Source of the DNA: Lepidodermella squamata
Lineage: Eukaryota; Animalia; Gastrotricha
Direction of reading: 5' to 3'
DNA: 64,000 bases
Assembly (NCBI GenBank): GCA_047495785.1
Contig: JBLDXI010000003.1
Span: 2,728,001 to 2,792,000, forward strand
Shown here: in pieces, positions 40,207-58,334 of the stretch
Layout of the letters: the number at the start of each line of letters is the position of its first letter
Position numbering within the stretch: position 1 is the stretch's first letter
Translations under genes and position numbers: made by a program
Notes under the pieces: model-generated
Databases searched by the model: none
What the model was told of the DNA's origin: nothing
What the model saw: the letters and a program-made list of their open reading frames with translations, nothing else

Positions 40207-42537
40207 CTAATGATGGTGCTTGGCGCCGTTGCGGCGAGCGTGGCGTTTATGATGGTGCTTGTGCTTGCGATGGCGCTTGTTGTGGCGCGCCTCTTCCTCC
40301 TCGGAGTGCTGACGGTGAACTTCCTCCTCCTCACTGCCGAAATGTTCGAACTTCATCTGCACCGGGGTCAGCTTGTTCTTGGCCGGTTGTTGTTGTTGTA
40401 GCTTCAGGCTGTTCTGGCTCAACATTTGCTGCTGTTGCTGGTCGTTCATGTTGACCTTGACCTCGCGAACCTGAACCGGCGGCTGAACCATCGCGTCCGG
40501 GCGGTGCTGGACGGCAGCCTCAGCCATCGACTGCTGCTTGGCGGGGAACTGCTCCTTCTGGTTCATCTGCATCTGCTGCTGCTGTTGGTGGCGCTCTTCG
40601 ACATTAACAGGCTGTTGGCGGTGGTAGGAAAGGGTGTGCCACAACTTGTTGTCGCGCTCTTCGACAGCCTCGTGCCGTTGTTGCTGCTGCTGTTGATGTT
40701 GTTCGAACTGCTGCGGTTGCTCTTGATGGTAGCCGGTCGACAAGAACGTCTGCTTGTGTTCAACCTAAAAAAACACAGATGATTAATATCGAAATTCACG
40801 AGGTCACGAGGTCATGAGGTCGGGCCATGTCCCTTAAGTAACGCAAGCAAAGAAAATACTCGGAAATGGGTTCAGAAACTCTAAAATTAGAGACGAAGTC
40901 ACATCACATGGCCATAAAATTTTTAGAAAAATTTAAATAAAATCACGAGAATATTAATCAAGTATGTCCCTTGTTAATGGGATTAAAAAAGTCCGGAGAA
41001 ATTGGGTCCAACCGGGTAAAATACCGGAAATTACCGAACCAGTTACCATCGGGGTTTTCTGGGTATTCTTCGGATTTTTCTTTCTTTCTTCAGTTAAATG
41101 GAATATTCTATCGGTAGGTTTAATTTCAAAAAAAATTTGAATTTCCTACGATAAGTTGCCAAATTAAAAAATAGTTGTGCAACTTCTGGGACACTAGAAA
41201 ATCCGGAAAACTGGGATTAGTGCTGATAATTATCGAACCGGGTTTTTCCGAGGCTTCTTTCGGCAATTTCACCATTCTCCAGTGAAATCGTGTGGAAAAA
41301 ACGGGAAACATTCTGTTTATTGGTATGTTTGATTTTGGAAAGCAAGCCTAATTGCTTGCATAAATTCCCAAAAATTAAAAAAAAAATCTGAACAATTCCG
41401 AACAAATCCCCATCATTGCCGGTACATTTTTTAATGAAATATAGCTGACATTACATATTGATGAGCCAAGCCTAAACCCCTTTTAGATTATCGATGACAG
41501 AAAATCCCGCTCAAAATTCCTCAGGATGATTAAAAATTTCGAGGGACGTTAAAGAAGGACCATAACCTAAATTTCAATCGAAAATTCAATTGAAATCTTT
41601 GCTGAAAGGTTTAAGCGCTTAGTCAGGTCCAATATACCAACATATCGATAGAGTCTTTCCGGGAAAGTAGAGAGGGATTTCCAATAATTTTCAAACTAAT
41701 TCAATGTGATTTCTAACCTGTTGCTGTTGGTGGTGTTGTTCCTTATGTTGGTAGTGGCTGTTGTGCGACTTGGACTCGTGGTGCTGCTCCTCTTGGTGCA
41801 TCATCATCTTCGCGAACTCGCTGTCCTGCTTCTCAGTCTGGGACGACGGGGCCTTGCGGCTCTTACGCTCCTCCTGGTACTTGGTCCACCAGGTCGGCAC
41901 CGGGTACTCAGGGAACGGCCATTCCTCAACCGCCGGCTGTTCGTGCTGCAGCTGCTGATGGTGGGCCTGGGGCTGGGACTGGTGGGCAATCACCGGCTTG
42001 GCAGCGACCTTCTCATGCTGGTTGGTCAGTTGTTGCTGTTCGTGCAGCTTCTCCTGCTCCTGGTCCTGGTGCGAGCGCAGGCGAACCTGGGCGTGTTGGT
42101 GCTGCTGATGCGGGTGGTACTGGTTGGCCTGGCGTTGAAGCTGGACAACCATTTCATTCAAATGGCCACTCTGAACAGGGACATGAGGAACACCAGCCTC
42201 GTCACGACGGTGCTGTTGCTGCTGCTTCATCATCGGAAGGCGAGGCGACATGGTGGTTTCAACATCACGAAGTTTTCGGTCCGATTTCTGTTGCTTCTTC
42301 ACCGGCTGGTACTTGGACGGCTTCTGCTGCTGGGGCTGGTTGCGGGGGCGGCGGGTAGTCGCCTCGACACGGCCTCGCCTCGGCTTGTAGCTCATCGATT
42401 CTTCGGTAGATTCGCTGAATTTAGCAGCGAACGCTATAAAAACAAATTTAACCATTAATAAAAAAATATTGAAAAAAATCAGAAAAATTACCAGCCGCGA
42501 ATAGACCGCAAACAACTGCCAGAGCTAAAATCCTCAT
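40207..42537 (-). CDS. Secreted Gln/His-rich low-complexity protein (exons 42537-42492, ~42433-41718, 40764-40207)
   Basis: 46-nt signal exon MRILALAVVCGLFAA, phase-1 intron, ORFs 41691-42515 and 40207-40743 in frame; ends ARRNGAKHHH. Confidence 0.8.
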
Positions 42538-43747
42538 ATTTTATGTAATTTCTATTACAAAGGTGAGAAAATTGTTTTTGTGATAGCTATAATTTGTTGA
42601 CTGAAAAAAGCTTTTATGAAATAAATTTAATTTCAATCGCTATTCGGTTTTTTTGTGAAGCGCGTGCCTCATATTATTACACGCGCGTCTCGCGTTATTG
42701 CGCAATGACACGCGATACGGCTTTTTTAGCGCCAAAATAGCACGTGTTTTATTCACCGGTGTTCAATTTTTATTTTGAAGTCTTTTTTCGTTGTACCGCA
42801 GGGCGACTTTCAGTGCATAGCAAGATCTTATTTCTTAGATCAAACTGAGCCGAAGAGATAAAACAAGGCGAGAGATTATCGCGCTGCCAAGTAAATAAAA
42901 ATGCGCAAAAATAATATTGAGATGAGGAATATAACGCGAACATAAAAATAATAATTATTCGGGGAAATTCTGATGAAAACATTGCTAAGCTGAAGAGCTA
43001 ACAACAACAAGTCGTTTACACCAACTCCGCCGAGGGAAAATCAAGTTCATTTCAAGGTTTCTTCGATTTCATTCCTTTTTCAACCATATATTATTGTCCC
43101 ATTATTTCATGAAAAAAGCGTTCTTCTTACTTCTGATTGCTCTCCACAAATCCAGGCTATTACTTTCAATGGTAATAAAAGTGTAAAAAAACGGCTACTA
43201 GGGTTGTTCCCGACAGATCGAACTATTGCGCTCTCAATTATATTTCATCCTCTTTATTAGCCGCAAAAAAACCGCAACTTGTTTGCCCGCGGCAACAAAT
43301 GAGCGCTATCAATCATAAGCGCATTATATGCTTAATATGGCGGCTAACAACAAGCGCAATGAGTGTCTTACCAGACATCGGGGTTCACATAGTGCGGCTA
43401 TCAATCATAAATGCCGCTGTTTTTACGATTGGATTGCAACCACCTGTTTCGAACCGGTTCCCATATTTTATAGCGTTCGCCCACACAAAAAGTAGATTCC
43501 CGATTTATTACAGCGCTATTGTTGCATAGCGTGTTTATCATTTTCGGGATTTAACCACCAATAGTTGTTTTGTCGGATATTACGATCCAGCGATTTCTCT
43601 GGAGAGAACATTTTTTATTCAGTATTTTAAAAGAAAATTTCTTGTTTAAAATGTAATCATATTTCGCAAATTTAATACCTGTTGCAAATGAATATTTTTA
43701 GACCTATTTAGATAGCAATATTGTAGGTTTTTTTCGTATATTTAACG

Positions 43748-46017
43748 ATGTTCGCCACCAGGCTAGCAGTTCTAGCCGCGACCTGCGTAATACTAGCAGC
43801 AGCCGAGAAAAAAATTGTCTCGACAATTGAAGTGAGTCATTTTTTATTTCACTCAGCGGTTTCGGGTTTCTATTTTCTTGATCGATAATGATACCCCGAC
43901 TTATTGTTTTAACTATACTTGGTAACATCAGGTAGCTAGAAAAATTCCGAGAATTAAAGTCCTATACAGTTCGGAATAGACTGATCATAGCGCAAAATAA
44001 AATAGTGAAATCTATCGGTCTGGCATGATAATACAAAATTCAGATCCCAAGGCCCAGGGGCAGCCTGAATTTCAAAAAAACCAAAAAACCAAATTTTCGG
44101 AAATTCTACAATTCTGGAGCTTCAAATTTGCCATGCCCTTTCGAATATTGATAGTTTCCGAGTATCAATAAAAAATCCCAGAAAATGTTGAAAATTTGAG
44201 AAGGCGACCTTGGTTACGTTTCAGAAAAGCTTGTTTCCGAACACAGTAACTTCGCACCGCTAGGATTAGGAAACTTAGAAATTTGACAATAATTCAAGAA
44301 TTCTTCCTTAAAAGTTCCTTACACGTTTTGAAATTTGCGCCGCACAGTTGAAGCAGAATTTCATCCAAACATGAAATCGACAGTTTTCCTTGTAGATCCA
44401 TGATTGAGATCTACTGGGGGCAAGATATATAAAGATTTCAATTTTTTATTAAAATGGAGGGAATATTTTATCAAAACCTCTCACTCACATGATTTTAAAA
44501 CCATATTCTACTTTTCAGCAAGAGCCATTCTTGCGCGACCTTGGCAATGGAGTTTTCGAGGGCTACTTGGTCGATCTCCTCGAAGCCGTCTCAAAACGCG
44601 CCGGTTTCGAGTACGAATTCCGCCTCGTCCCCGATCGCATGTACGGCCGGTTGGATGATGCCACAAATCGCTGGACCGGCATGATGGGCGAACTGGTCGA
44701 TAAGCGAGCCGACCTGGCCGCCTCGCCGTTAACCATCACCGAACAACGCGAAAAATACGTCGATTTCGTGCCATTCATGGAGACTGGAATATCTATCATG
44801 ATGCTGAAGCCTGAGTTCGTTAAAACGGGTGTCTTCTCTTTCCTCGAACCGCTGTCTAACGGCGTCTGGCTATGCTTCGCCGCTGCTTATGTTGTAGTCA
44901 CCCTATTGCTGTGGTTCATCTCGCGCCACAGCCCTTGCGAGAATAACGGCACCCAAGAGTTGGTAGAAGCCAGCCCATCTGCTGCTGTAACTATGAGATC
45001 TCGATCAGTTTCCGGCCGCTTTGTCGGCGCAGTTTGGTGGTTACTGACCATCATCGTCCTCGGATCATACACCGCTAATCTCGCGGCGAACATTGCTGTT
45101 GACCGAATGACTCAGCCTATTTTAACCCCGGAAGATTTAGGCCGCCAAAATGTGGTCCGAATGGGCGTTGTTGGCGGTGGGGCGACTTACCTGTTTTTCA
45201 AGCATTCTTACGACCCACTGCACCAGCGCATGCTTCAGTCTATGAACTTGGACCCGGCGCATAGTTACGTGAAAACTGTACCCGAGGGCGTTGAACGGGT
45301 GCGTAATTCCAATGGGCGTTACGCGTTTATGCTCGAGTCGAAATCGAATGACTACTACAACTCGCGGGAACCATGCAATACGTACAAGGTCGGGCGAAAT
45401 CTCGACACGAAATACTACGGCATCGCCTTCCAAAAAGGATCCTCATTGAAGTGAGTGAATTAAAATTCGGAATTTTTCAAAAATTGATTTTAAATTTTTT
45501 AAATTTTATGGAAAAAATTAATTTTTTACTTTCCCTTTGCCAATGATTACCCAATATTTTTTCATAAAGGGAAACCTTCGAAACAGAGATCAAAGTATTG
45601 CGAGATAGCGGCGAATTGGAAAGGCTGGAGAGCAAATGGTTCGATAACAGCGAATGTGGCGCAAATTCTGGCCAATTGAAAGTTTTAGCAAATGTAAATT
45701 ACTAATTTACTTTGCCAAATAAAAATTTATCTCAATTTTGAATCTCTAGGATGATGGAGGCAAATCTTTAGGTCTCAATAACCTGGCTGGGGCTTTCTAC
45801 GTTTTTATCATCGGCATCGTCATTGGACTAATAGTCCTCGCGATAGAATTTTTCAACGCAGCTAGACAGGAAGCTACCAGCCAAAATGTGAGCTTTGCGT
45901 TTTTTCAAGATTTAAATTTTTACTAACTCCTATTGAAAATTAAAGGCACCGATTGGAGAAGTTGTTAAGCGTCGACTCGGCTACAGCCAGCCCGAAGCGG
46001 CGAGCACATCAGCCTGA
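43748..46017 (+). CDS. Minimal AMPA/kainate-like ionotropic glutamate receptor 1 (no ATD, no M2); exons 43748-43831, 44519-45450, ~45570-45681, ~45750-45887, ~45946-46017
   Basis: Signal peptide then S1 (EGYLVDLL, WTGMMGEL, PLTITEQR), M1, M3 SYTANLAA, S2 (FMLES, YYGIA), KW..C, M4 LAGAFYVFIIG. Confidence 0.9.
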
Positions 46018-46391
46018 AATTGCGTCATTTAATTGCCCCAATAATCGTGTTATCTCCAGAGCTCACCCTGTGGCTCATCTTTGACTCATATTCTCATTAA
46101 AAAAATAATTACACCTGAATAATGCGCTTATTATAAATGTATTTTTGCAATAATTATTTGTATTCTGCTTCCAGTAATTGAAAATGAATGTTCTATAAAT
46201 AAGTTGCCTTTGTCCTTGCAAGACCCTGCAATCTCGAAAGAATAAACCAACGAAATTGATTTTTTTACCCTTGATAGTATAGAACGATTAATTTCTTTTG
46301 AAATCTAAAAGAAACGACGGATCTCCAAATTTCTAGGTATTGTTTATGGCTTTGATTGCTAAACATTCTAATTTTATTTCTCATTTAGAAA

Positions 46392-48292
46392 ATGGCAATT
46401 TCAATCTTCATGGTGTTTGCTGGACTGGCCATTTATGCTGCTAATAGCGTTAGAGGAGAGAGAAAAATTGTTTCATCTATTGAAGTAAGTTTGAACTCGA
46501 GAATTTTTTGCGGAATTTCTGGGAAATCGGTATTAATTCGGTGAAAACGGATACCAAAAACCTGTGTCTCTTAGGCTTAGCTGGGGCCGGGTTAATGGGA
46601 CTGTCGCCAAAATTCACTCAAGTGTCATCAAAATCGATTTGCACAATTTATCATCTGGGACCAAACGGAATCCATTTCTAGGTAGATCTCGCCACCCTGA
46701 TGACTTTTTTCTTTGAGAGCGGCTTCCTAGCTATCACCGTTCTTGAGATAATCGCCCAGCTGTGACATCAGTAAGGTCACGTGACCAACTTGACACTGGA
46801 TTATCTCCGTAACGGTAGACGATAAAAATATGAGGTTTTCAAATTATTAATCCCCGAATATTTCCCTACCTAAATGGCGTGTGTCAATAGGGAAAGAAAA
46901 AATGATTAAATCTTGGTATTTTATAATGATTTTTTCCTATTATTCACAGAATTTGCCGTTTTTGAGGCGCATCAGTCAGTACCACTTTGAAGGCTACATC
47001 GCCGATATGATGGATGGCATCGCACGGCGTGCCGGCTTTCGCTACGACTTCCGCCTCGTCGGCGACGGCTCATACGGCTCCCTGGACGAGTCAACCGGCC
47101 GCTGGTCCGGCATTATGGGCGACGTCATCGACCAACGCGCCGATTTGGCCGCTGCTCCGCTAACTATCTCCGCCCTTCGCAGTAAATACGTCGATTTCAT
47201 TCCATTCATGAGCTCAGGAATTTCGATAATGATGCTGAAACCAGACTATGTCACAACAGGGTTTTGGTCATTTCTCGACCCGCTGTCTAACGGCGTTTGG
47301 ATTTGCCTGTTTTTCGCCTATTTTGCAGTCACCCTGCTGCTCAACCTCATCCGCCACTTCTCACCAAAGCCAGAAAATTGCGCTGAAAACCGCCCGATTT
47401 CCAGCCGATTTGTCGGCGTTGCTTGGTGGCTGCTGACTATTGTAATTTTCGGCAGCTACACGGCTAATTTAGCGGCGAATTTCACGACAGAGCGGCTGAA
47501 ATTGCCAATTTTGAGCGCTGAAGATTTGTCGCGGCAGAACATTGTCAAGTATGGCAGTTTGCGGAAAGGATCAACGGCTACGTTTTTCGGTAACAGCAGC
47601 GACCCGGTCTACAGTCGGATGTGGGCGGCGATGAAGTTGGACGAAACTACGTTTGTTAAATCGGTTGATGAAGGCGTTGAACGCGTGAGAAATTCGAATG
47701 GGAAATACGCGTTTCTGCTGGAATCACGCACGAATGAGCACTACAATTCAATTGAACCGTGTAACACGATCAAAATCGGCAAAAATCTCGATGAGAAATG
47801 GTATGGCATCGCGTTACCAAAAGGATCTCCTATGAGGTAATTTTCTGGAATTTTCTAGAATTTTTCTAAATTTTTTCTAGAACCGGAATCGAGCAAGCGA
47901 TTGAAGACATGCGAAAGAGCGGCGAATTGGATCGAATTGAAAAGAAGTGGTGGGTCGATAAAAACGTTTGTGGGCTATCTGCTGCGAAAACTGTGGTACG
48001 GTCTCTTGCCCTTCCGGATCATTATTAAAAGAATTTTCCAGGTACCCTACGACGGGAAGAAATCCTTAACTCTGGAAAATGTTGGCGGCTCTTTAGCCGT
48101 CTTTGGAATCGGATTGTTTACTGCTCTGGTCATTTTCGGCATCGAAATGTTTCTTCAGGCTAGAGTGGATTCGATTGATCAACAGGTAAATATAGAACGC
48201 TTAACCGGTTTTATCGTCATTTTTTCTCATTTATTTAGACCAATTTCAGTGAAGCCATGCGCCGTAAAATCAACTGCTGCGGTACAAACTAA
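46392..48292 (+). CDS. Minimal AMPA/kainate-like ionotropic glutamate receptor 2 (no ATD, no M2); same 5-exon structure
   Basis: Exon 1 46392-46484 (signal + ERKIVSSIE), exon 2 46950-47836, later exons encode KKWW..C and M4 VGGSLAVFGIG. Confidence 0.9.
46535..46925. repeat. Repeat family A, copy 4 (in intron 1 of iGluR 2)
   Basis: Shared blocks with the 15294 and 27419 copies. Confidence 0.75.
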
Positions 48293-48753: not shown

Positions 48754-51700
48754 ATGCAACATTTGCTTTCATTATTGCCACCGAATGATGCTCAAACCAA
48801 TAATGTCGATAAGCCCTCGTTCCCTCCACTGGCCATTCCGAGAGACATCAGCAGAGAGATGGATAGTCTCGGGCCAGGACCTTCCGAGCCGAATGACGAA
48901 CCAGAAGCCAAGCGTAAAAAACAGGTAAATTTAAGGGAAAAATCAGTGAATTTTTGCATTTCCCCTCATTTTAGAGCGAAGAAAGCGGCGAAAATCAAGC
49001 TTATTCAGGTAGTGGACTCGACGAAATTTTCGGCGCTAAGTTAGTGACTGATCTGCCATCTGCTTCCTGGACTTACATGTCGCCTGTTGAGGTGCTACCC
49101 TCGATTGAAATCGGCAATCACGCGCTGAAATTTCCGTTCAACGAAGAAGCGACAACTCAAATTATTCGAAAAGCTCAACCGACCCAGGCGAAAAATATGA
49201 AGATGTACGAAATCAGCCCAAGTAATTTCACAATAAAAACTTCCGTATGGCAAGCAATGTTTGAAAGCTCGGTTACAAGCCCGTTACTCGAAGCGATCAG
49301 GCGTGAAATGGCGCCGGGGTGTGTTAAAATTACGGCCAAGTTGAATAAACTGCGCGTTCTTGATCGTGGCTCGTTTTTCCGATCTATCCCAACGTCGGCG
49401 TCGTCGAGCCACAGCCAGCGGCGGAATCATTTTGCGACGCTGTTTATGGTTATGCCGAGTTGCCACAATGGAGGCGTTGTCACGGTTCATCACGCCGGCA
49501 AAGAGCGGCCGTTTTCTTTCAATCTAGCGAACGATTGTCTCAAAAACGAAAACCTAAGGTCAGCTTTTATTTTACCGTTCATTTCAGAAACGTTTTTAAT
49601 AGGCCGCTAAAGATTATTTTTAATGGGAAATACTAGAAATATAGGGATCATAGAGATCTGGTTAACCATTGAGAAAACTCATGCAGAAAACTCTCTACAA
49701 AATTTTAGAATCTGATCTCTGTGATAGGAATAGACAGTTGTTTAGAAACATATTTATTAAGGAGGAATTCTTTATAATTATTTATTTTGAGAATACCGTA
49801 AGGGTGGTTAGTCTTGGACAGGCTAAATTTGGACAAAAAACTTCTACAACTGAAAGACTTCGATGTGCCTGGAAAGACGGGCCCTTCTACGGTACCAAAT
49901 TTACGGTATTCTGAAAGTTAGCTGTTTTTATAATAAATACATAGGTCTCGAAAGGTCGACTTGGGACCCCTCATTCCCGGTCAATTTCTTGGCACCATGA
50001 GCGCATTTTTTTCGGAATTTTAAGGAAGGCTTTTAGTCATGCACGCATCCCGACGATTATGAATATGCTAATGAGGTGACCAAAATTCCCCGCAAGTGTC
50101 CAAATTTATCCAAACCTTGCACCGTTTTTATAAAATCGACGTAATATAGGAAAATTACGAAATTTTGCACAGACGCGAGAATTTGGCCCCCTCATACCCT
50201 GAAATTTCCACTTTTTCATAATTTTTCCTGATTTTCTAGAGCTGAAAACCCATGTAAAAAATAACTGCTATACGTGCAATGGGTTGGATTTTTTGGGTGT
50301 GCCAAGTGGGCATCCTAAATTCGATATAGATTTTTTACAAATCATCGGTTTTTTCCGCGATCAAAAGTTTTGGAAACCAGCATTTAAAATATTTCTGCCC
50401 AGCTGTTATCAGATATAATCGGAATAATATAATCAACAAGCCCTTGAGCTAGAATTAGAACCTTTATTTTCTGCTTTTTTATTTCTTTACTGGCGATTTA
50501 ATTTTTTAATTTTCATTCCTACTTCTCATGCCCTAATTAAGGTTGTAAATGCATACAGTGACCAGGTTCATCAATATTTGCGCTGAAATAAAGATTAATA
50601 GCGCCGTAAGCTCGACAACAGCTTCCAAGTTCCAAGAAGTGCCTCGAAAGCTCTGCTTCATCGCATGCCCTAATTTGTTCGCGCAGAAGCAAATAGCTGA
50701 TGCATAAATCACAACACACATTCCGAAAATCGTCTGCCCGAAAACGTAATGCGCTGCGACAATACGGCTAGGCGTTTTCGGTAAATTTTGCAAAACTTGG
50801 TCTTGCATTACAAAAATTGCTAACATAACAGTACATGCGTAACACGACCTGTCAGGCATTTCAGGTGGTATAAGGAAGGAAGAAATTACTAGTAAGCTCA
50901 GAATAAGACAAGGCCCGAAGCAGTTCATCATATAATAATCGGGTTTTCGTTTGAATTTTAAGAAAAATGTTATCTGAAGAATTTCTTCACCATAATCTGG
51001 ATAACCAAACTCCAAACCGGTGTAATTTTTCGAAAATTTGCGAACCAACTGCCAGTTTGAATTTTGAGGAATAAAGGCATCAACGGTGAAAGGGTAATAA
51101 TCAGATGGACCAAATACTACATTCTTCGGCAATTGATTTGATGTCAACAAAATTCCACATGTTTGCTCATCGAAAGGAAACAGCCAAAAATCCAAGTCAC
51201 AATAAGTTTCTATCTGGCCAGTTTGGCTGAGTTGGAACGTTCCTATCGGGGGGTTAACATAGTAAAGCTGAAGCAAGCCGGAAGTTTCATCAAATGCCGA
51301 GCTTCGAATGTTATTTCTAACCATGATATTAGGTCGCCAATACATTTTCGGGTCTTCATGCTGAAGCTGGGTAATTTCAGGAGGCCACCAACTTCGCGAA
51401 TTTTCGTAGAAATTCTTGACACAAGGCACTTGCCACGATAGAATTATGGAGCCGATGAAGCTTAAAGACTCGCCGACGTCGTTAATTTCTAAAAATCGAT
51501 CTGGATGTAGAAAGGCGTTGACTTTTGTTGGTATTCTCTCCAATTCTTGCGGCGAATTCACGTAAGGCGCTATGTGGCAATTTAGCAATAGAGATTCTGT
51601 GAAATTCGACAGCGATCTCGTCTCCGCTGTCATCGCTAGAATTGCTAACCATTTAAAAACGAGCATTTTTGATGGGGATAAATTATAGATGACTGGATTA

Positions 51701-54700
51701 GCGTTTAAACAGAGTCGATGAAGCGGAAACATCCCTATTTACATAGCTCTAATTTCCGACAATTTGGATTTTCAATCGATTCCGTTCAATACTACGAAAT
51801 AAATGTCGCCAGGATTTTCCAGAATATGTCTAGGCGGATCCACATTCAAATATTTGAGACGAAATGCAAACTACTCTGAAGTGCTATTTTTGAATAAATT
51901 TCTGAATCATTATGAAAATAGTATAAGATTTTTTATTTATTTTTATGCGAAATTCCCAAAAATAATTTGGAAAATAAATTTTAGGCTTGGGCTTAGGTTT
52001 GGTTGAATTATTGGAACGTGCGCATGGGTACTTGCGCATAGAGTACTTTGAGGTAATTTGCGCATTGGCCTTTTGCGCACAAGAGCATTTCTAGGTAATT
52101 TGCGCACGAATTAACAATAATTATCAAAAAATATTATTTTCAACAAAAACCGTCGCATTTTAATTGCTAAAACAAATCGTCGTCACTGTCGGAATTATTA
52201 TCACTGTCATCATCACTTTCAGCCGTAAATGATGTCGGCCCTTCAGAGGGGAAAGTTTCATCGAATTGGTCCAGATTCAGAGCCAATTTATCAGTCAGTT
52301 CAAGCAGTGTGATTTCATTATTTTTAAACGAGTTAGCTAAAGTCTGAATATGATTTGTAACGGCCTCAGTTTTGCGGTTGATCTTCGCCTTGATGCCGGC
52401 GCCAATTTGTAGAAGAACCGATCGCATGTACGCCTCCTCGTTTTGCAGCGAACGAGCCAGCCGGTTCATTTTGTGGTTCCAACCTTCGACGCCTCGGTGG
52501 ACACGTTCCAGTCCTGAAACTTCACCTTGCCAAACCACTGTTTCTCGAAGTACTCTAGAAACTTTTTGAACTTGAGCCGATCAGCATTGGATAATTGGTC
52601 TTTGATGAGTTGAAATGCGGCCGGAACTTTTCGAGCAGGTATAAGCGGCAGGGCCATAAGACGCTTCGCAAGAGTACGAAAAGATGAGCCGGCTGTTGAA
52701 TAAAGTCCAATGAAGCCCTTTTGTTGTATCCAACGAATGACCGCCTGTTTAAAATGAAACAGGCAACCGACAAACGTTGCGCTGGGGAACTGTTTCTTGA
52801 TGGCTGGAATCAGCCCCGTCTCGAAGTCGGCAGTGATCGTCAATTTGCGAGAACTAGCCCAGCCAGGGGAAACTCGGGACATTTCTTGCTTTCAGCTCGT
52901 CCAACGTCTTCACACGTCTCAGTAATGCGCAACTCAGAGTTAAATTCTCACTCACACACCCTTTGCGCAAATTACCTAGAAATGCTCTTGTGCGCAAGTA
53001 CCCATGCGCATGTTCCAATATACCGTTTGGTTAAAAACGCGAAAATAGGATAGAAAATTATTTGAATGTCAAATTTCTTTATTTTTTGTTGCAGATGTCA
53101 CGCCCTTGCGTTTTTCCGGACATGCGAATACGAGATTTCGCCGATCGTAACTGGTCACATGGCAATGCTGGCTTACGATTTGTACCACGACGGAGGAGCT
53201 GCGCCTTTGCTGCCGATGACAACCTGTTCATTCGAAGAGGAACTCACTGGTAAATTGATTCATTTTTGATTCATTTTTTCCCGATACCGAATTGCCGAAT
53301 TTCTCAAACTTGAATAATCTGAGTATGAACTCTAAAGTTGGATTCACGGACGCGCGACTCGTCGTGCGCGACAGTCAAGCTGCGGTCACAAATAAAAATC
53401 CCGGCGAACATGGTCATGCAATCATCCGTGATGTTCGACGCGAATAGAAACTGTTCGCCGAAAAATTTAGCGAAGAAATTCGAGCTTAGCGGCAGCTCAC
53501 GTGACCCGTTTGTTTACTGTTACTAAGCAACTTGGCAACACAGGAGAATACATTTATTCCCAACGATAATTAATTGAAACACTCAAAGATTGAATTGTCA
53601 AATTGATGAGACCATTTTTATTTCACACTCGACCCGGCCCGCGGGTGTGAGAAACCTTTAACCTTCAAATGGTCTCGCAGTGCCGATTGGTTGCTCTTGT
53701 TACAACTGGCTCCTTGTAGTGGCAATAAACCCGGCTCGTTGCCTTCACCATGCCGTTGTGGGTCATCTGGACACTGGCCTGGCGCTGCTTGGGTGTGCAT
53801 GGGTACGGGTTGTTGTAATAGTAATTGTTGTAATAATAGCCATTATTCTAACTGACCATTAATGGTTTCAGTTATCAAGGAGTTTTGAAATGTTTTAGGG
53901 AGATTGGTTTCAAGTAAAGATATGTGCAAAGTGTCCGCGAAATCATTTTGTACCAGATTTCTGCGGTAAGGTGCAGAAATCGCCTCGCGAACGGCGGCTA
54001 GAACGTGAGCGTTCGGCTTGACCAGGCCACAACGGCCATACTTCGGGTTGGCTGTTGTCCTGCTCCAGTTTCAACTGGCGGGTGATGTAACCGGCGACAC
54101 TAGCTGATGAGCGATCGTCGGCTGGCAATTCGACTCGCAAAATCGGTTCGAGGCGGTTGTCCAGTTTCGAAAGCTGCTTCAACTTTCGGGCGGTAGCAAT
54201 TTTCAGGCTTATGATTTTGTGTCTTTGGACATTGGCATTCTTAGAAATTCCTAAATTCGAACCAAGGTATCGTAGAACAGCGATTCACTGAAGCATAACC
54301 GTATAGTTGAAGGCTGAAGCAGTAATCGGAAATAATTCCAAATATACCCCTCGACGTTGCACTTGAAACCTTCAGATTTGCAGGGGATCCGAGTGGTTGA
54401 ATATTGAAACTTCAATATCCGTTTGTCTCGAGGATAGGTTAGGTTCCGGCTCCTTCCTTCAATTTTCAGGGTAGTAAGCGACGTTATCGAGACATTTCTT
54501 GACCCGTAGAATTGCAGGGACTTGACTTCATGATAGCACGAATAATGGTAGTGCGAATTTTCGCGTCTACAGAATCGCAGCGAAGATCCATCAGCGGATC
54601 CACCGACAGCAAGTAGAAATACGCCAAATAGTCTTGGCGCAAGTTGAACGAAACACAACTATTCAAATATAAATGATCTCGCGTGAATCAGGCTCAAGAT

Positions 54701-57650: not shown

Positions 57651-57723
57651 GCAGGTGGCTGATCGCGCTGATATTTTATGCTCCTCAGAATTTGTTCGGT
57701 AATTTTGATTTTTTTAATTTCAG

Positions 57724-58334
57724 CGAAACCACCTGCTGCGAAAAGCGAAAGTATAACGATTCTCAACACGCCACCGCCGAAATTCGCGATTTTAGGCGAG
57801 CGTCTCCTCGGCTACGGCCGTAGCCTGAAATTCACCATAGCCCAGGGCGATATCACCAGTCTCGTTGTCGATGCCATAGTCAACCAAACGAATGGCTCCT
57901 TCTCAAAAATGGGCCCGGTAGCCGATGCTTTGACCCGCATGAGTGGCAGCGAATTCGACGCGAGTTTGCAAGATTTAGTCGGCCGTCACCAAACGCTGCG
58001 ACCGAGTGAAGCCGTCATGGTCATGTCATGCCACGATCACTTCAAATTTGTCATCCACGTCAATACAGCTTCGATGACAAGTGCCGGTGAAATCGAACAG
58101 GCTGTTCTCAATATTTTGACTCAGGCTGAGAAGTTGGAACTGCGATCTGTTGCCTTGGCTTCGATTGATCTGCCGGGGGTTGCCAAGTCGCAGAGTGGCC
58201 AGGCGACTGTTCGAGCGTTTCGTAATTATTTCGGAATGTTGCCGCCGACTTCGAGTGTTAAACACATCTACTTCTTGCCGTCTGATATGGAAACAGTCGG
58301 CGTCTACCTCCTTGAATTAGCCAAATGTGATTGA
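57724..58334 (+). CDS. macroH2A-type macro domain exon (no histone fold adjacent)
   Basis: FAILGERLL..QGDIT..VDAIVNQTN...KFVIHVN...LRSVALASI...SSVKHIYF..DMETVGVYLLELAKCD parallels the macroH2A C-terminal domain ([27 protein letters not shown]); strong acceptor at 57723. Confidence 0.8.

What the first reader, a model, noticed from the sequence alone, without database searches (positions are those of the whole stretch)
43748..48292. Tandem minimal glutamate receptors lacking both the amino-terminal domain and the M2 pore loop
Seen: in both genes the signal peptide runs straight into S1 (KIVS(T/S)IE-xxPF), so there is no ATD. Within one continuous exon, M1 is joined to M3 by a short polar linker (gene 1 SRHSPCENNGTQELVEASPSAAVTMRSRSVSGR; gene 2 RHFSPKPENCAENRPISSR). 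The re-entrant M2 helix and Q/R-site filter (NSLWFSLGAFMQQG in AMPA receptors) are absent. Both change SYTANLAAF to SYTANLAAN. Ligand-contact equivalents of GluA2 Y450, P478, T480, R485, T655, E705 and Y732 are retained, as are M4 and the S2 cysteines. The paralogs are well diverged yet both open, arguing against pseudogenes. Established: ATD-less relatives exist (GluR0, many insect IRs) but keep the pore loop. Inference: a new receptor class, either a filter-less large-pore channel, a non-conducting signalling receptor, or a modulatory subunit.
Basis: partly seen in the sequence, partly recalled or inferred. Interest (0 to 1): 0.85.

Follow-up and report, generated by a model that had tools for sequence, protein, structure and literature searches.

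The report
Glutamate receptors without a pore loop
Two neighbouring, transcribed and selectively maintained genes of a small invertebrate encode AMPA-type glutamate receptor subunits. They keep the glutamate-binding domain and three membrane helices but have lost the outer domain and the pore loop that makes such receptors ion-selective, so they are unlikely to work as ordinary channels.

Summary
Window 43748-48292 (+) carries two five-exon genes, of 449 and 430 aa. Each has the order signal peptide, S1, M1, short linker, M3, S2, M4.

- **No ATD:** neither gene has one.
- **M2 missing:** M1, linker and M3 lie in one uninterrupted exon. Between the M1-end SP and the M3-start GR/SR the linker is 26 aa in gene 1 and 12 aa in gene 2. 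Canonical relatives have 34-50 or more there, and all carry NSxWFxxGxxxQQG.
- **Conserved parts:** the glutamate-contact residues, the S2 disulfide and M4 are kept. The gate motif reads SYTANLAAN.
- **Transcription:** a cDNA run shows GT..AG joints at seven of the eight introns and no intron depth.
- **Selection:** listed changes in a second haplotype are 20 synonymous to 5 non-synonymous. Paralog dN/dS is about 0.25.
- **A relative:** an intronless 431-aa protein (P0007) from two metagenomes has the same build, shares the linker motif VEASPSA, and groups with both genes (SH-aLRT 99) inside the AMPA-type group.
- **Structure:** AlphaFold2 models the linker as low-confidence coil, not a re-entrant helix.
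- **Other lineages:** two more pore-loop-less transcripts (P0113, P0109) lie elsewhere in the tree.

Missed exons and pseudogenes are excluded. Function is untested. The most likely roles are silent or modulatory subunits, or a non-conducting glutamate sensor. I found no description of this in the searched literature, and the scan had not noted it before on other DNA.

The parts
43748..46017 (+). Gene 1: 449-aa ATD-less, pore-loop-less AMPA-type subunit. Exons 43748-43831, 44519-45450, 45570-45693, 45750-45887, 45946-46017 (stop at 46015-46017).
   Evidence: Searches give the model. One search gives cDNA joints 43831>44519, 45450>45570 and 45887>45946. Intron 45694-45749 is inferred from GT..AG and frame.
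43748..43804 (+). Gene 1 signal peptide (MFATRLAVLAATCVILAAA), followed directly by S1 (EKKIVSTIE|QEPF).
   Evidence: Hydropathy and upstream in-frame stop at 43724. The cDNA contig covers 43700-43831.
44849..44929 (+). Gene 1 pre-M1 and M1 helix.
   Evidence: AF2 helix at exon residues 114-137.
44930..45019 (+). Gene 1 M1-M3 linker (SPCENNGTQELVEASPSAAVTMRSRSVSGR). It takes the place of the M1-M2 loop, the M2 pore helix and the filter, and contains the VEASPSA vestige shared with P0007.
   Evidence: AF2 models it as coil with pLDDT about 52.
45020..45100 (+). Gene 1 M3, with the gate motif SYTANLAAN at 45065-45091.
   Evidence: The second haplotype differs here only at synonymous sites.
45783..45854 (+). 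Gene 1 M4 helix.
46392..48292 (+). Gene 2: 430-aa paralog. Exons 46392-46484, 46950-47836, 47881-47995, 48042-48185, 48239-48292 (stop at 48290-48292).
   Evidence: cDNA loose ends at 46484 and 46950 match each other, and joints lie at 47836>47881, 47995>48042 and 48185>48239.
47280..47360 (+). Gene 2 pre-M1 and M1 helix.
47361..47408 (+). Gene 2 M1-M3 linker (SPKPENCAENRPISSR). It is polar, has no vestige of M2, and is 14 aa shorter than in gene 1.
47409..47489 (+). Gene 2 M3, with SYTANLAAN at 47454-47480.
48081..48152 (+). Gene 2 M4 helix.

Best explanation
Shown. These are two intact, transcribed tandem paralogs that descend from an AMPA-type glutamate receptor subunit. An ancestor lost the amino-terminal domain and most of the re-entrant M2 pore loop (helix and Q/R-site filter), leaving a short cytoplasmic M1-M3 tether. 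Gene 2 later deleted the remaining 14-aa vestige. Because M2 is re-entrant, its loss does not change membrane topology. The glutamate-binding clamshell therefore stays outside the cell, coupled through conserved linkers to M1, M3 (gate motif 8 of 9 residues) and M4.

Inferred. Such a subunit cannot build the narrow cation filter. On its own it is most likely non-conducting, or at best a leaky, unselective pore. The helices that drive tetramer assembly and gating (M1, M3, M4) are conserved, and first-reader notes report pore-bearing AMPA-type genes elsewhere in this genome. I therefore take a 'silent' or modulatory role as most likely: the subunits would co-assemble with canonical subunits and alter or suppress their conductance. 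The closely related alternative is a membrane-anchored glutamate sensor that signals without ion flux, comparable to the kainate-binding proteins or to delta receptors.
For: - **Build:**
- **Transcription:** cDNA run X1 has GT..AG joints, zero depth in introns and a SMART adaptor.
- **Selection within the genome:** of the listed coding changes in the second haplotype, 20 are synonymous and 5 non-synonymous. In gene 1 codons 195-230 (the end of the linker, all of M3 and the start of the M3-S2 linker) they are all synonymous. For gene 1 against gene 2, dN is 0.41 and dS about 1.66.
- **Conserved family:** P0007 is intronless and has the same build and the VEASPSA motif. The clade has SH-aLRT 99 and lies inside the AMPA-type group.
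- **Selection on P0007:** between two metagenomes its CDS differs at 4 of 1296 sites, all synonymous, while the upstream DNA is 93.7% identical with 13 gaps.
- **Linker structure:** AF2 gives low-confidence coil between confident M1 and M3 helices in P0007 and in gene 1. The P0007 model matches GluA LBD-TMD structures.
- **M3 changes:** the clade shares substitutions at near-invariant M3 sites (F607L, F608L, L610I, F623N/A in GluA2 numbering), which fits repacking after the loss of M2.
- **Recurrence:** pore-loop loss together with ATD loss also occurs in other lineages.
- **Possible partners:** canonical AMPA-type genes in the same genome are reported in notes s1-407682 and s1-402101. I did not check them.
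Against: - No functional, assembly or localisation data exist, so the choice between modulatory subunit, non-ionotropic sensor and filter-less channel rests on inference.
- The vestige in gene 1 and P0007 (LVEASPSAAVTM) is nearly as hydrophobic as a canonical pore helix: an 11-residue Kyte-Doolittle maximum of 0.93 against 1.05-1.35. A shallow re-entrant element is therefore not excluded.
- The P0007 gate motif is degenerate (TYAANLSSA). That argues against a conserved gating role across the clade.
- Only monomers could be modelled.
- The cDNA contigs listed do not demonstrably cover 44869-44976, which encodes the end of M1 and the first half of the gene 1 linker.
- Only three family members were found, and the organism is unidentified.
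Confidence: 0.5

Rival explanations
1. Homomeric 'filter-less' channel. Four subunits would form a glutamate-gated pore lined only by M3 (and M1), giving a wide, poorly selective conductance.
For: The M3 gate motif is kept at 8 of 9 residues, and the LBD-TMD linkers are conserved in genes 1 and 2. M4, which AMPA receptors need for tetramer assembly (established knowledge), is present. Conserving a gate suggests that something is gated.
Against: In known structures the M2 helices fill the cytoplasmic half of the pore module. Without them the M1/M3 bundle would be open to lipid, so a stable aqueous pore is doubtful (inference from established structures). The P0007 gate motif is degenerate. No tetramer could be modelled.
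Confidence: 0.15
2. Non-ionotropic glutamate sensor or binding protein that acts alone. It would be a membrane-anchored clamshell working as a dimer or tetramer, signalling to cytoplasmic partners or buffering and presenting amino acids. The M helices would serve only as anchors.
For: All agonist-contact residues are retained. The pore loop can be dispensed with entirely in gene 2. The nearest Atlas clusters by features are the ATD-less vertebrate 'glutamate receptor U1' proteins, that is the kainate-binding proteins, which have never been shown to conduct (plus established knowledge). The same minimal build arose independently elsewhere.
Against: Simple anchors would not need M3 and the pre-M1, M3-S2 and S2-M4 linkers conserved at channel-like levels. 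The cytoplasmic parts are very short and carry no recognisable signalling domain.
Confidence: 0.25
3. Artefact or decay: a missed M2 exon, an assembly error, or young pseudogenes.
For: The genes are missing from public protein sets. The listed cDNA contigs leave 44869-44976 uncovered.
Against: - M1 and M3 lie in one open exon, 36-78 nt apart.
- A DNA run reproduces the window exactly across 44525-45060.
- Spliced cDNA exists for both genes.
- P0007 is intronless and has the same gap.
- Synonymous changes dominate strongly.
- Both reading frames are intact.
Confidence: 0.03

Closest known systems
AMPA-type ionotropic glutamate receptor subunits (GluA1-4 and invertebrate AMPA-like subunits)
   Same: They are the best sequence and fold matches: about 47% identity to GluA2 over S1-M1...M3-S2, and Foldseek E about 1e-40 to GluA LBD-TMD structures. 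The genes fall in the AMPA-type group of the tree. Agonist-contact residues, the S2 disulfide, the SYTANLAA motif and M4 are shared.
   Different: There is no amino-terminal domain and no M2 pore helix, Q/R site or filter. Near-invariant M3 residues are changed (F607L, F608L, L610I, F623N). The C-tails are very short.
Vertebrate kainate-binding proteins (frog, chick and goldfish KBPs; 'glutamate receptor U1')
   Same: They are ATD-less subunits of about 430-460 aa with signal peptide, S1, TMD, S2 and M4. They bind agonist but have never been shown to conduct on their own (established knowledge). By language-model features they are the nearest Atlas clusters to P0007.
   Different: KBPs keep a complete pore loop, are of kainate type and occur only in vertebrates. 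These genes are AMPA-type, come from an invertebrate and lack the loop.
Insect and protostome ionotropic receptors (IRs), and bacterial GluR0
   Same: Many lack an ATD, and they are reduced iGluR designs.
   Different: IRs have divergent ligand pockets that lack the glutamate contacts (PMC2924276), and they keep the pore loop. GluR0 keeps a K-channel-like P-loop and lacks M4. Here the glutamate pocket and M4 are kept and the loop is lost.
Delta receptors (GluD1/2) as non-ionotropic iGluRs
   Same: They set a precedent for iGluR family members whose main role is not ligand-gated current (PMC10861852 and established knowledge).
   Different: GluDs keep the ATD, which is essential for their synaptic organiser role, and an intact pore.

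Membership tests
iGluR superfamily (Pfam Lig_chan PF00060 + Lig_chan-Glu_bd PF10613) | Bilobed S1S2 ligand-binding domain interrupted by the membrane module | tested here: met
   Pfam E-values 3e-31 and 4e-22 (gene 1) and 2e-27 and 9e-18 (gene 2). AF2 and Foldseek.
iGluR superfamily (Pfam Lig_chan PF00060 + Lig_chan-Glu_bd PF10613) | Re-entrant M2 pore loop (pore helix plus filter) between M1 and M3 | tested here: not met
   The linker is 26 and 12 aa, against 34-50 or more with NSxWFxxGxxxQQG in about 150 relatives. There is a gap against GluA2. No hydrophobic segment is present. AF2 gives coil at pLDDT about 50-60. Gene 1 keeps a 13-aa vestige.
iGluR superfamily (Pfam Lig_chan PF00060 + Lig_chan-Glu_bd PF10613) | M3 gating motif SYTANLAAF | tested here: met
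   SYTANLAAN (8 of 9) in both genes. P0007 has TYAANLSSA, 4 of 9.
iGluR superfamily (Pfam Lig_chan PF00060 + Lig_chan-Glu_bd PF10613) | M4 helix after S2 (eukaryotic iGluRs) | tested here: met
   Hydropathy. AF2 helix 386-428 in P0007.
iGluR superfamily (Pfam Lig_chan PF00060 + Lig_chan-Glu_bd PF10613) | Ligand-gated cation conductance | not testable with these tools
   Needs electrophysiology.
AMPA-type (AKDF) subunits | Phylogenetic placement with AMPA-type sequences | tested here: met
   The gene 1, gene 2 and P0007 clade (SH-aLRT 99) sits inside a 57-row group (SH-aLRT 93) that also holds the GluA-like rows. The top PDB hits are GluA1-4. Resolution within the group is weak, and the clade has long branches.
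AMPA-type (AKDF) subunits | Glutamate-contact residues (GluA2 Y450, P478, T480, R485, S654/T655, E705, Y732) | tested here: met
   All are retained in gene 1, gene 2 and P0007. S654 is Ala in gene 1 and Thr in P0007; this residue also contacts the ligand through its backbone.
AMPA-type (AKDF) subunits | Amino-terminal domain (ANF_receptor) | tested here: not met
   The signal peptide runs into S1. There are upstream in-frame stops. The cDNA follows the genome through the 5' UTR. No ANF_receptor hit was found.
Kainate-binding proteins | ATD-less subunit of about 45-50 kDa with a complete M1-M2-M3-M4 module, of vertebrate kainate-type lineage | tested here: not met
   Size and the lack of an ATD match, but M2 is missing and the placement is AMPA-type. 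No KBP sequence was included in the tree. The similarity rests on Atlas features only.
Ionotropic receptors (IRs) | Divergent LBD lacking glutamate-contact residues | tested here: not met
   The contacts are retained. The IR definition is taken from PMC2924276.

The most novel reading that the evidence does not exclude
Pore-loop-less, ATD-less iGluR subunits would be a recurrent and functional receptor design, arising at least twice in animals. Glutamate binding would be transduced through M3/M4 movements without a selectivity filter. The output would be either a gated wide pore or scramblase-like pathway, or ion-flux-independent signalling. This would be a natural experiment that separates iGluR gating from permeation.
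Probability: 0.3. Interest if true: 0.9.

Novelty: new variant of a known kind. Interest (0 to 1): 0.72.

Why it matters
The pore loop is regarded as a defining and essential part of every ionotropic glutamate receptor. I found no natural subunit without it in the literature I searched.

These genes show that such subunits can be expressed and maintained by selection in at least two taxa. Similar losses happened independently in other lineages.

They therefore offer a natural test of three questions:
- Can the LBD-M3-M4 machinery fold, assemble and signal without a filter?
- Do 'silent' iGluR subunits exist, by analogy with silent Kv subunits?
- How far do non-ionotropic roles of iGluRs extend, as with kainate-binding proteins, delta receptors and metabotropic kainate or NMDA signalling?

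The clade-specific M3 substitutions point to residues that normally pack against M2.

Tried and rejected
- **More family members (proteins):** three word-indexed protein searches added only canonical receptors beyond P0007. They used the whole exon, a family profile, and the M1-linker-M3 region alone.
- **More family members (DNA):** two JGI metagenome scans gave nothing, or only canonical AMPA-like loci with an intact M2.
- **Earlier notes:** a look-up by sequence in the scan's own notes was blank.
- **Shared synteny:** both the window and L001 have a Cys-loop receptor gene next to the iGluR. The two proteins show no similarity, so I rejected this.
- **Rfam:** the scan of the window found nothing.
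- **Organism:** I could not identify it. No hit exceeds 51% identity in 1.8 billion cluster representatives, so it is not one of the annotated rotifers in that set.
- **Missed exon or pseudogene:** rejected (see rival explanations).
- **Single origin of all five pore-loop-less sequences:** rejected by the AU test, p = 0.02. The group was named after I had seen the tree.
- **Operator rules:** The human proteins listed among the hits were not used further.
Full report
**1. What is in the sequence**

Window 43748-48292 (+ strand) holds two head-to-tail genes in a compact animal genome with 44-120 nt introns, plus one longer first intron in each gene.

Spliced models, all with GT..AG introns and kept in frame:
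- Gene 1: 43748-43831, 44519-45450, 45570-45693, 45750-45887, 45946-46017 (449 aa).
- Gene 2: 46392-46484, 46950-47836, 47881-47995, 48042-48185, 48239-48292 (430 aa).

Pfam finds Lig_chan-Glu_bd and Lig_chan in the large exon of each gene. The two large exons are 55% identical. tblastn finds no other iGluR gene in the window.

**2. Absence of the amino-terminal domain**

Exon 1 of each gene encodes only a hydrophobic signal peptide. It runs straight into the first S1 strand (EKKIVSTIE|QEPF and ERKIVSSIE|NLPF). In-frame stops lie 24 and 6 nt upstream of the ATGs. A cDNA contig follows the genome from 43700 through exon 1 and then splices to 44519. Gene 2 starts 374 nt after the gene 1 stop, which leaves no room for an ATD.

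**3. Absence of the pore loop**

M1, the linker and M3 lie in one open exon.
- Against GluA2, gene 1 residues 150-159 face chain residues 163-196. Gene 2 lacks a further 14 residues.
- I aligned the 156 hits (up to 1200 aa long) of two database searches and counted residues between the M1-end 'SP' and the M3-start 'GR'. Canonical sequences have 34-50 or more, always with the NSxWFxxGxxxQQG signature. One sequence counts 25 residues that are M2 itself. Gene 1 has 26 residues and gene 2 has 12, without the signature.
- Hydropathy shows a signal peptide, M1, M3 and M4 only.

Gene 1 keeps a 13-residue stretch, LVEASPSAAVTM. MAFFT places it under the C-terminal half of M2. It is mildly hydrophobic, with an 11-residue Kyte-Doolittle maximum of 0.93, against 1.05-1.35 for canonical pore helices. 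It is best read as a vestige. Gene 2 has deleted it.

**4. What is retained**
- The GluA2 agonist contacts Y450, P478, T480, R485, T655, E705 and Y732, and the S2 cysteines, are present in both genes. S654 is Ala in gene 1.
- The gate motif is SYTANLAAN in both genes.
- M4 is present.
- The pre-M1, M3-S2 and S2-M4 linkers follow the family consensus.

**5. Are the genes real and in use?**

Run X1 behaves as cDNA. Its depth is zero in the introns and in the intergenic gap. Its contigs carry GT..AG joints at 43831>44519, 45450>45570, 45887>45946, 47836>47881, 47995>48042 and 48185>48239. Loose ends at 46484 and 46950 read into each other. A SMART cDNA adaptor is present. Both genes are therefore transcribed and spliced as modelled.

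Run X2 covers the introns evenly, so it is DNA. It reproduces the window exactly across 44525-45060, which includes the gene 1 linker.

A caveat applies to the cDNA evidence. The contigs listed for X1 do not demonstrably cover 44869-44976. Direct transcript evidence for the first half of the gene 1 linker is therefore missing. However, no splice could add sequence between codons that are contiguous in an exon.

**6. Selection**
- Both runs contain a second haplotype or homeologue at about equal depth. Of its 25 listed coding differences, 20 are synonymous. In gene 1 the count is 15 synonymous to 2 non-synonymous, and all changes in codons 195-230 (the end of the linker, all of M3 and the start of the M3-S2 linker) are synonymous.
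- Nei-Gojobori values for gene 1 against gene 2 are dN 0.41 and dS about 1.66. dS is near saturation, and the ratio is about 0.25.

**7. A conserved family**

A scan of 1.84 billion cluster representatives put a 431-aa protein, P0007, at the top (46% identity, one unbroken alignment).
- It is encoded by an intronless ORF on contigs from two ENA metagenomes.
- It has the same build: signal peptide into S1, and a 25-residue linker that contains the same VEASPSA motif.
- It has M3 (TYAANLSSA) and M4.
- The two contigs differ at 4 of 1296 coding sites, all synonymous. Their upstream DNA is only 93.7% identical and has 13 gaps.

I built a tree from 84 sequences with the linker columns removed. Gene 1, gene 2 and P0007 form a clade (SH-aLRT 99) inside the AMPA-type group (SH-aLRT 93). 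P0007 branches outside the gene 1 and gene 2 pair.

This gives an order of events. The loss of M2 and of the ATD predates the split from P0007. The tandem duplication came later, and the 14-residue deletion in gene 2 came last.

The clade also shares substitutions at near-invariant M3 sites: F607L, F608L, L610I and F623N/A in GluA2 numbering.

**8. Structure**

AlphaFold2 with a 54-sequence alignment gave confident models: P0007 with mean pLDDT 87, and the gene 1 exon with mean pLDDT 88.
- In P0007, M1 is 150-176, M3 is 198-231 and M4 is 386-428. The linker 177-197 is coil at pLDDT 50-60.
- In gene 1, exon residues 138-163 are coil at pLDDT about 52, with two isolated 3-residue turns.
- The P0007 model superposes on GluA LBD-TMD chains with Foldseek E about 1e-40.

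It is not met. Only monomers could be folded, however.

**9. The same loss elsewhere**

Two other ATD-less sequences also lack M2:
- P0113 and its 99%-identical partner P0157 come from two Logan runs.
- P0109 comes from a JGI metatranscriptome.

They fall in a different, kainate-like part of the tree. An AU test rejects a single clade of all five pore-loop-less sequences (p = 0.02; the group was named after I had seen the tree). These are transcript contigs, so exon skipping cannot be excluded for them.

**10. Interpretation**

M2 is re-entrant, so deleting it leaves the topology intact. The clamshell can still face outward and pull on M3.

Without four pore loops there can be no Q/R-site filter. 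In known structures the pore helices also fill the cytoplasmic half of the pore module. A conventional selective channel is therefore excluded.

Conservation of M1, M3, M4 and the coupling linkers argues that the membrane part does more than anchor the protein. First-reader notes, which I did not check, report AMPA-type genes with pore loops elsewhere in this genome.

My ranking of the functional readings:
- Silent or modulatory subunit in heteromers, or closely related non-conducting sensing: about 0.5.
- Stand-alone non-ionotropic sensor: 0.25.
- Homomeric filter-less pore: 0.15.
- Artefact or pseudogene: 0.03.

**11. Comparison with what is known**
- The closest family by descent is the AMPA-type subunits.
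- The closest by design is the vertebrate kainate-binding proteins, which are ATD-less and of similar size but keep M2. They are also the nearest ESM Atlas clusters.
- IRs differ because they have lost the glutamate contacts while keeping the loop (PMC2924276).

Full-text searches for pore-loop-less iGluRs found nothing relevant. Two broad phylogenetic studies do not mention such subunits. One of them filtered candidate sequences only by conservation of the SYTANLAAF motif. The library holds open-access papers only, so this supports novelty but does not prove it.

**12. Verdict**

This is a new variant of a known kind. It would interest specialists because it removes what is regarded as an essential module of the family. 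The scan had not recorded this feature before on other DNA.

Noticed in passing
window 46683-46839 (gene 2 intron 1): The DNA run shows depth of about 8600 here, against about 100 around it, with many loose ends. This indicates a very high-copy repeat or mobile element inside the intron.
   Followed up: no
window 46396/46967, 46448/47027, 46450/47022, 47153/47258, 47372/47464: cDNA run X1 has low-depth contigs (about 8-10) that switch strand between these places inside gene 2. They are probably hairpin or template-switch artefacts of the cDNA or its assembly, but this is unexplained.
   Followed up: no
window 45031-45207 and 47307-47502: A second haplotype or homeologue, about 5% divergent, is present at roughly equal depth in both the DNA and the cDNA runs, so both copies are expressed.
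   Followed up: partly
L003 96-1385, L009 102-1391 (P0113/P0157); L004 1-1209 (P0109): Independent ATD-less iGluR transcripts from other organisms also lack the M2 pore loop and have degenerate M3 motifs. They sit in a kainate-like part of the tree, apart from the window's clade. P0070 and P0127 have degenerate M2 regions.
   Followed up: partly
L001 2353-3648 vs L002 972-2267: The intronless relative P0007 occurs in two different ENA metagenomes with an identical protein. The CDS has 4 synonymous differences, while the upstream DNA is much more divergent. In L001 a Cys-loop receptor gene with introns lies next to it.
   Followed up: partly
window 50533-51732 (-) and 57678-58334 (+): One ORF has a Neur_chan_LBD (Cys-loop receptor) domain and another has a Macro domain. 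The Cys-loop ORF is not similar to the one beside P0007.
   Followed up: partly
window 41691-42515 (-): A long ORF rich in Gln and His lies just upstream of gene 1 on the opposite strand. Its nature was not examined.
   Followed up: no
window 45065-45091, 47454-47480 and M3 as a whole: The clade shows substitutions at M3 positions that are near-invariant in about 150 relatives: F607L, F608L, L610I and F623N/A in GluA2 numbering. They may be compensatory repacking after the loss of M2.
   Followed up: partly
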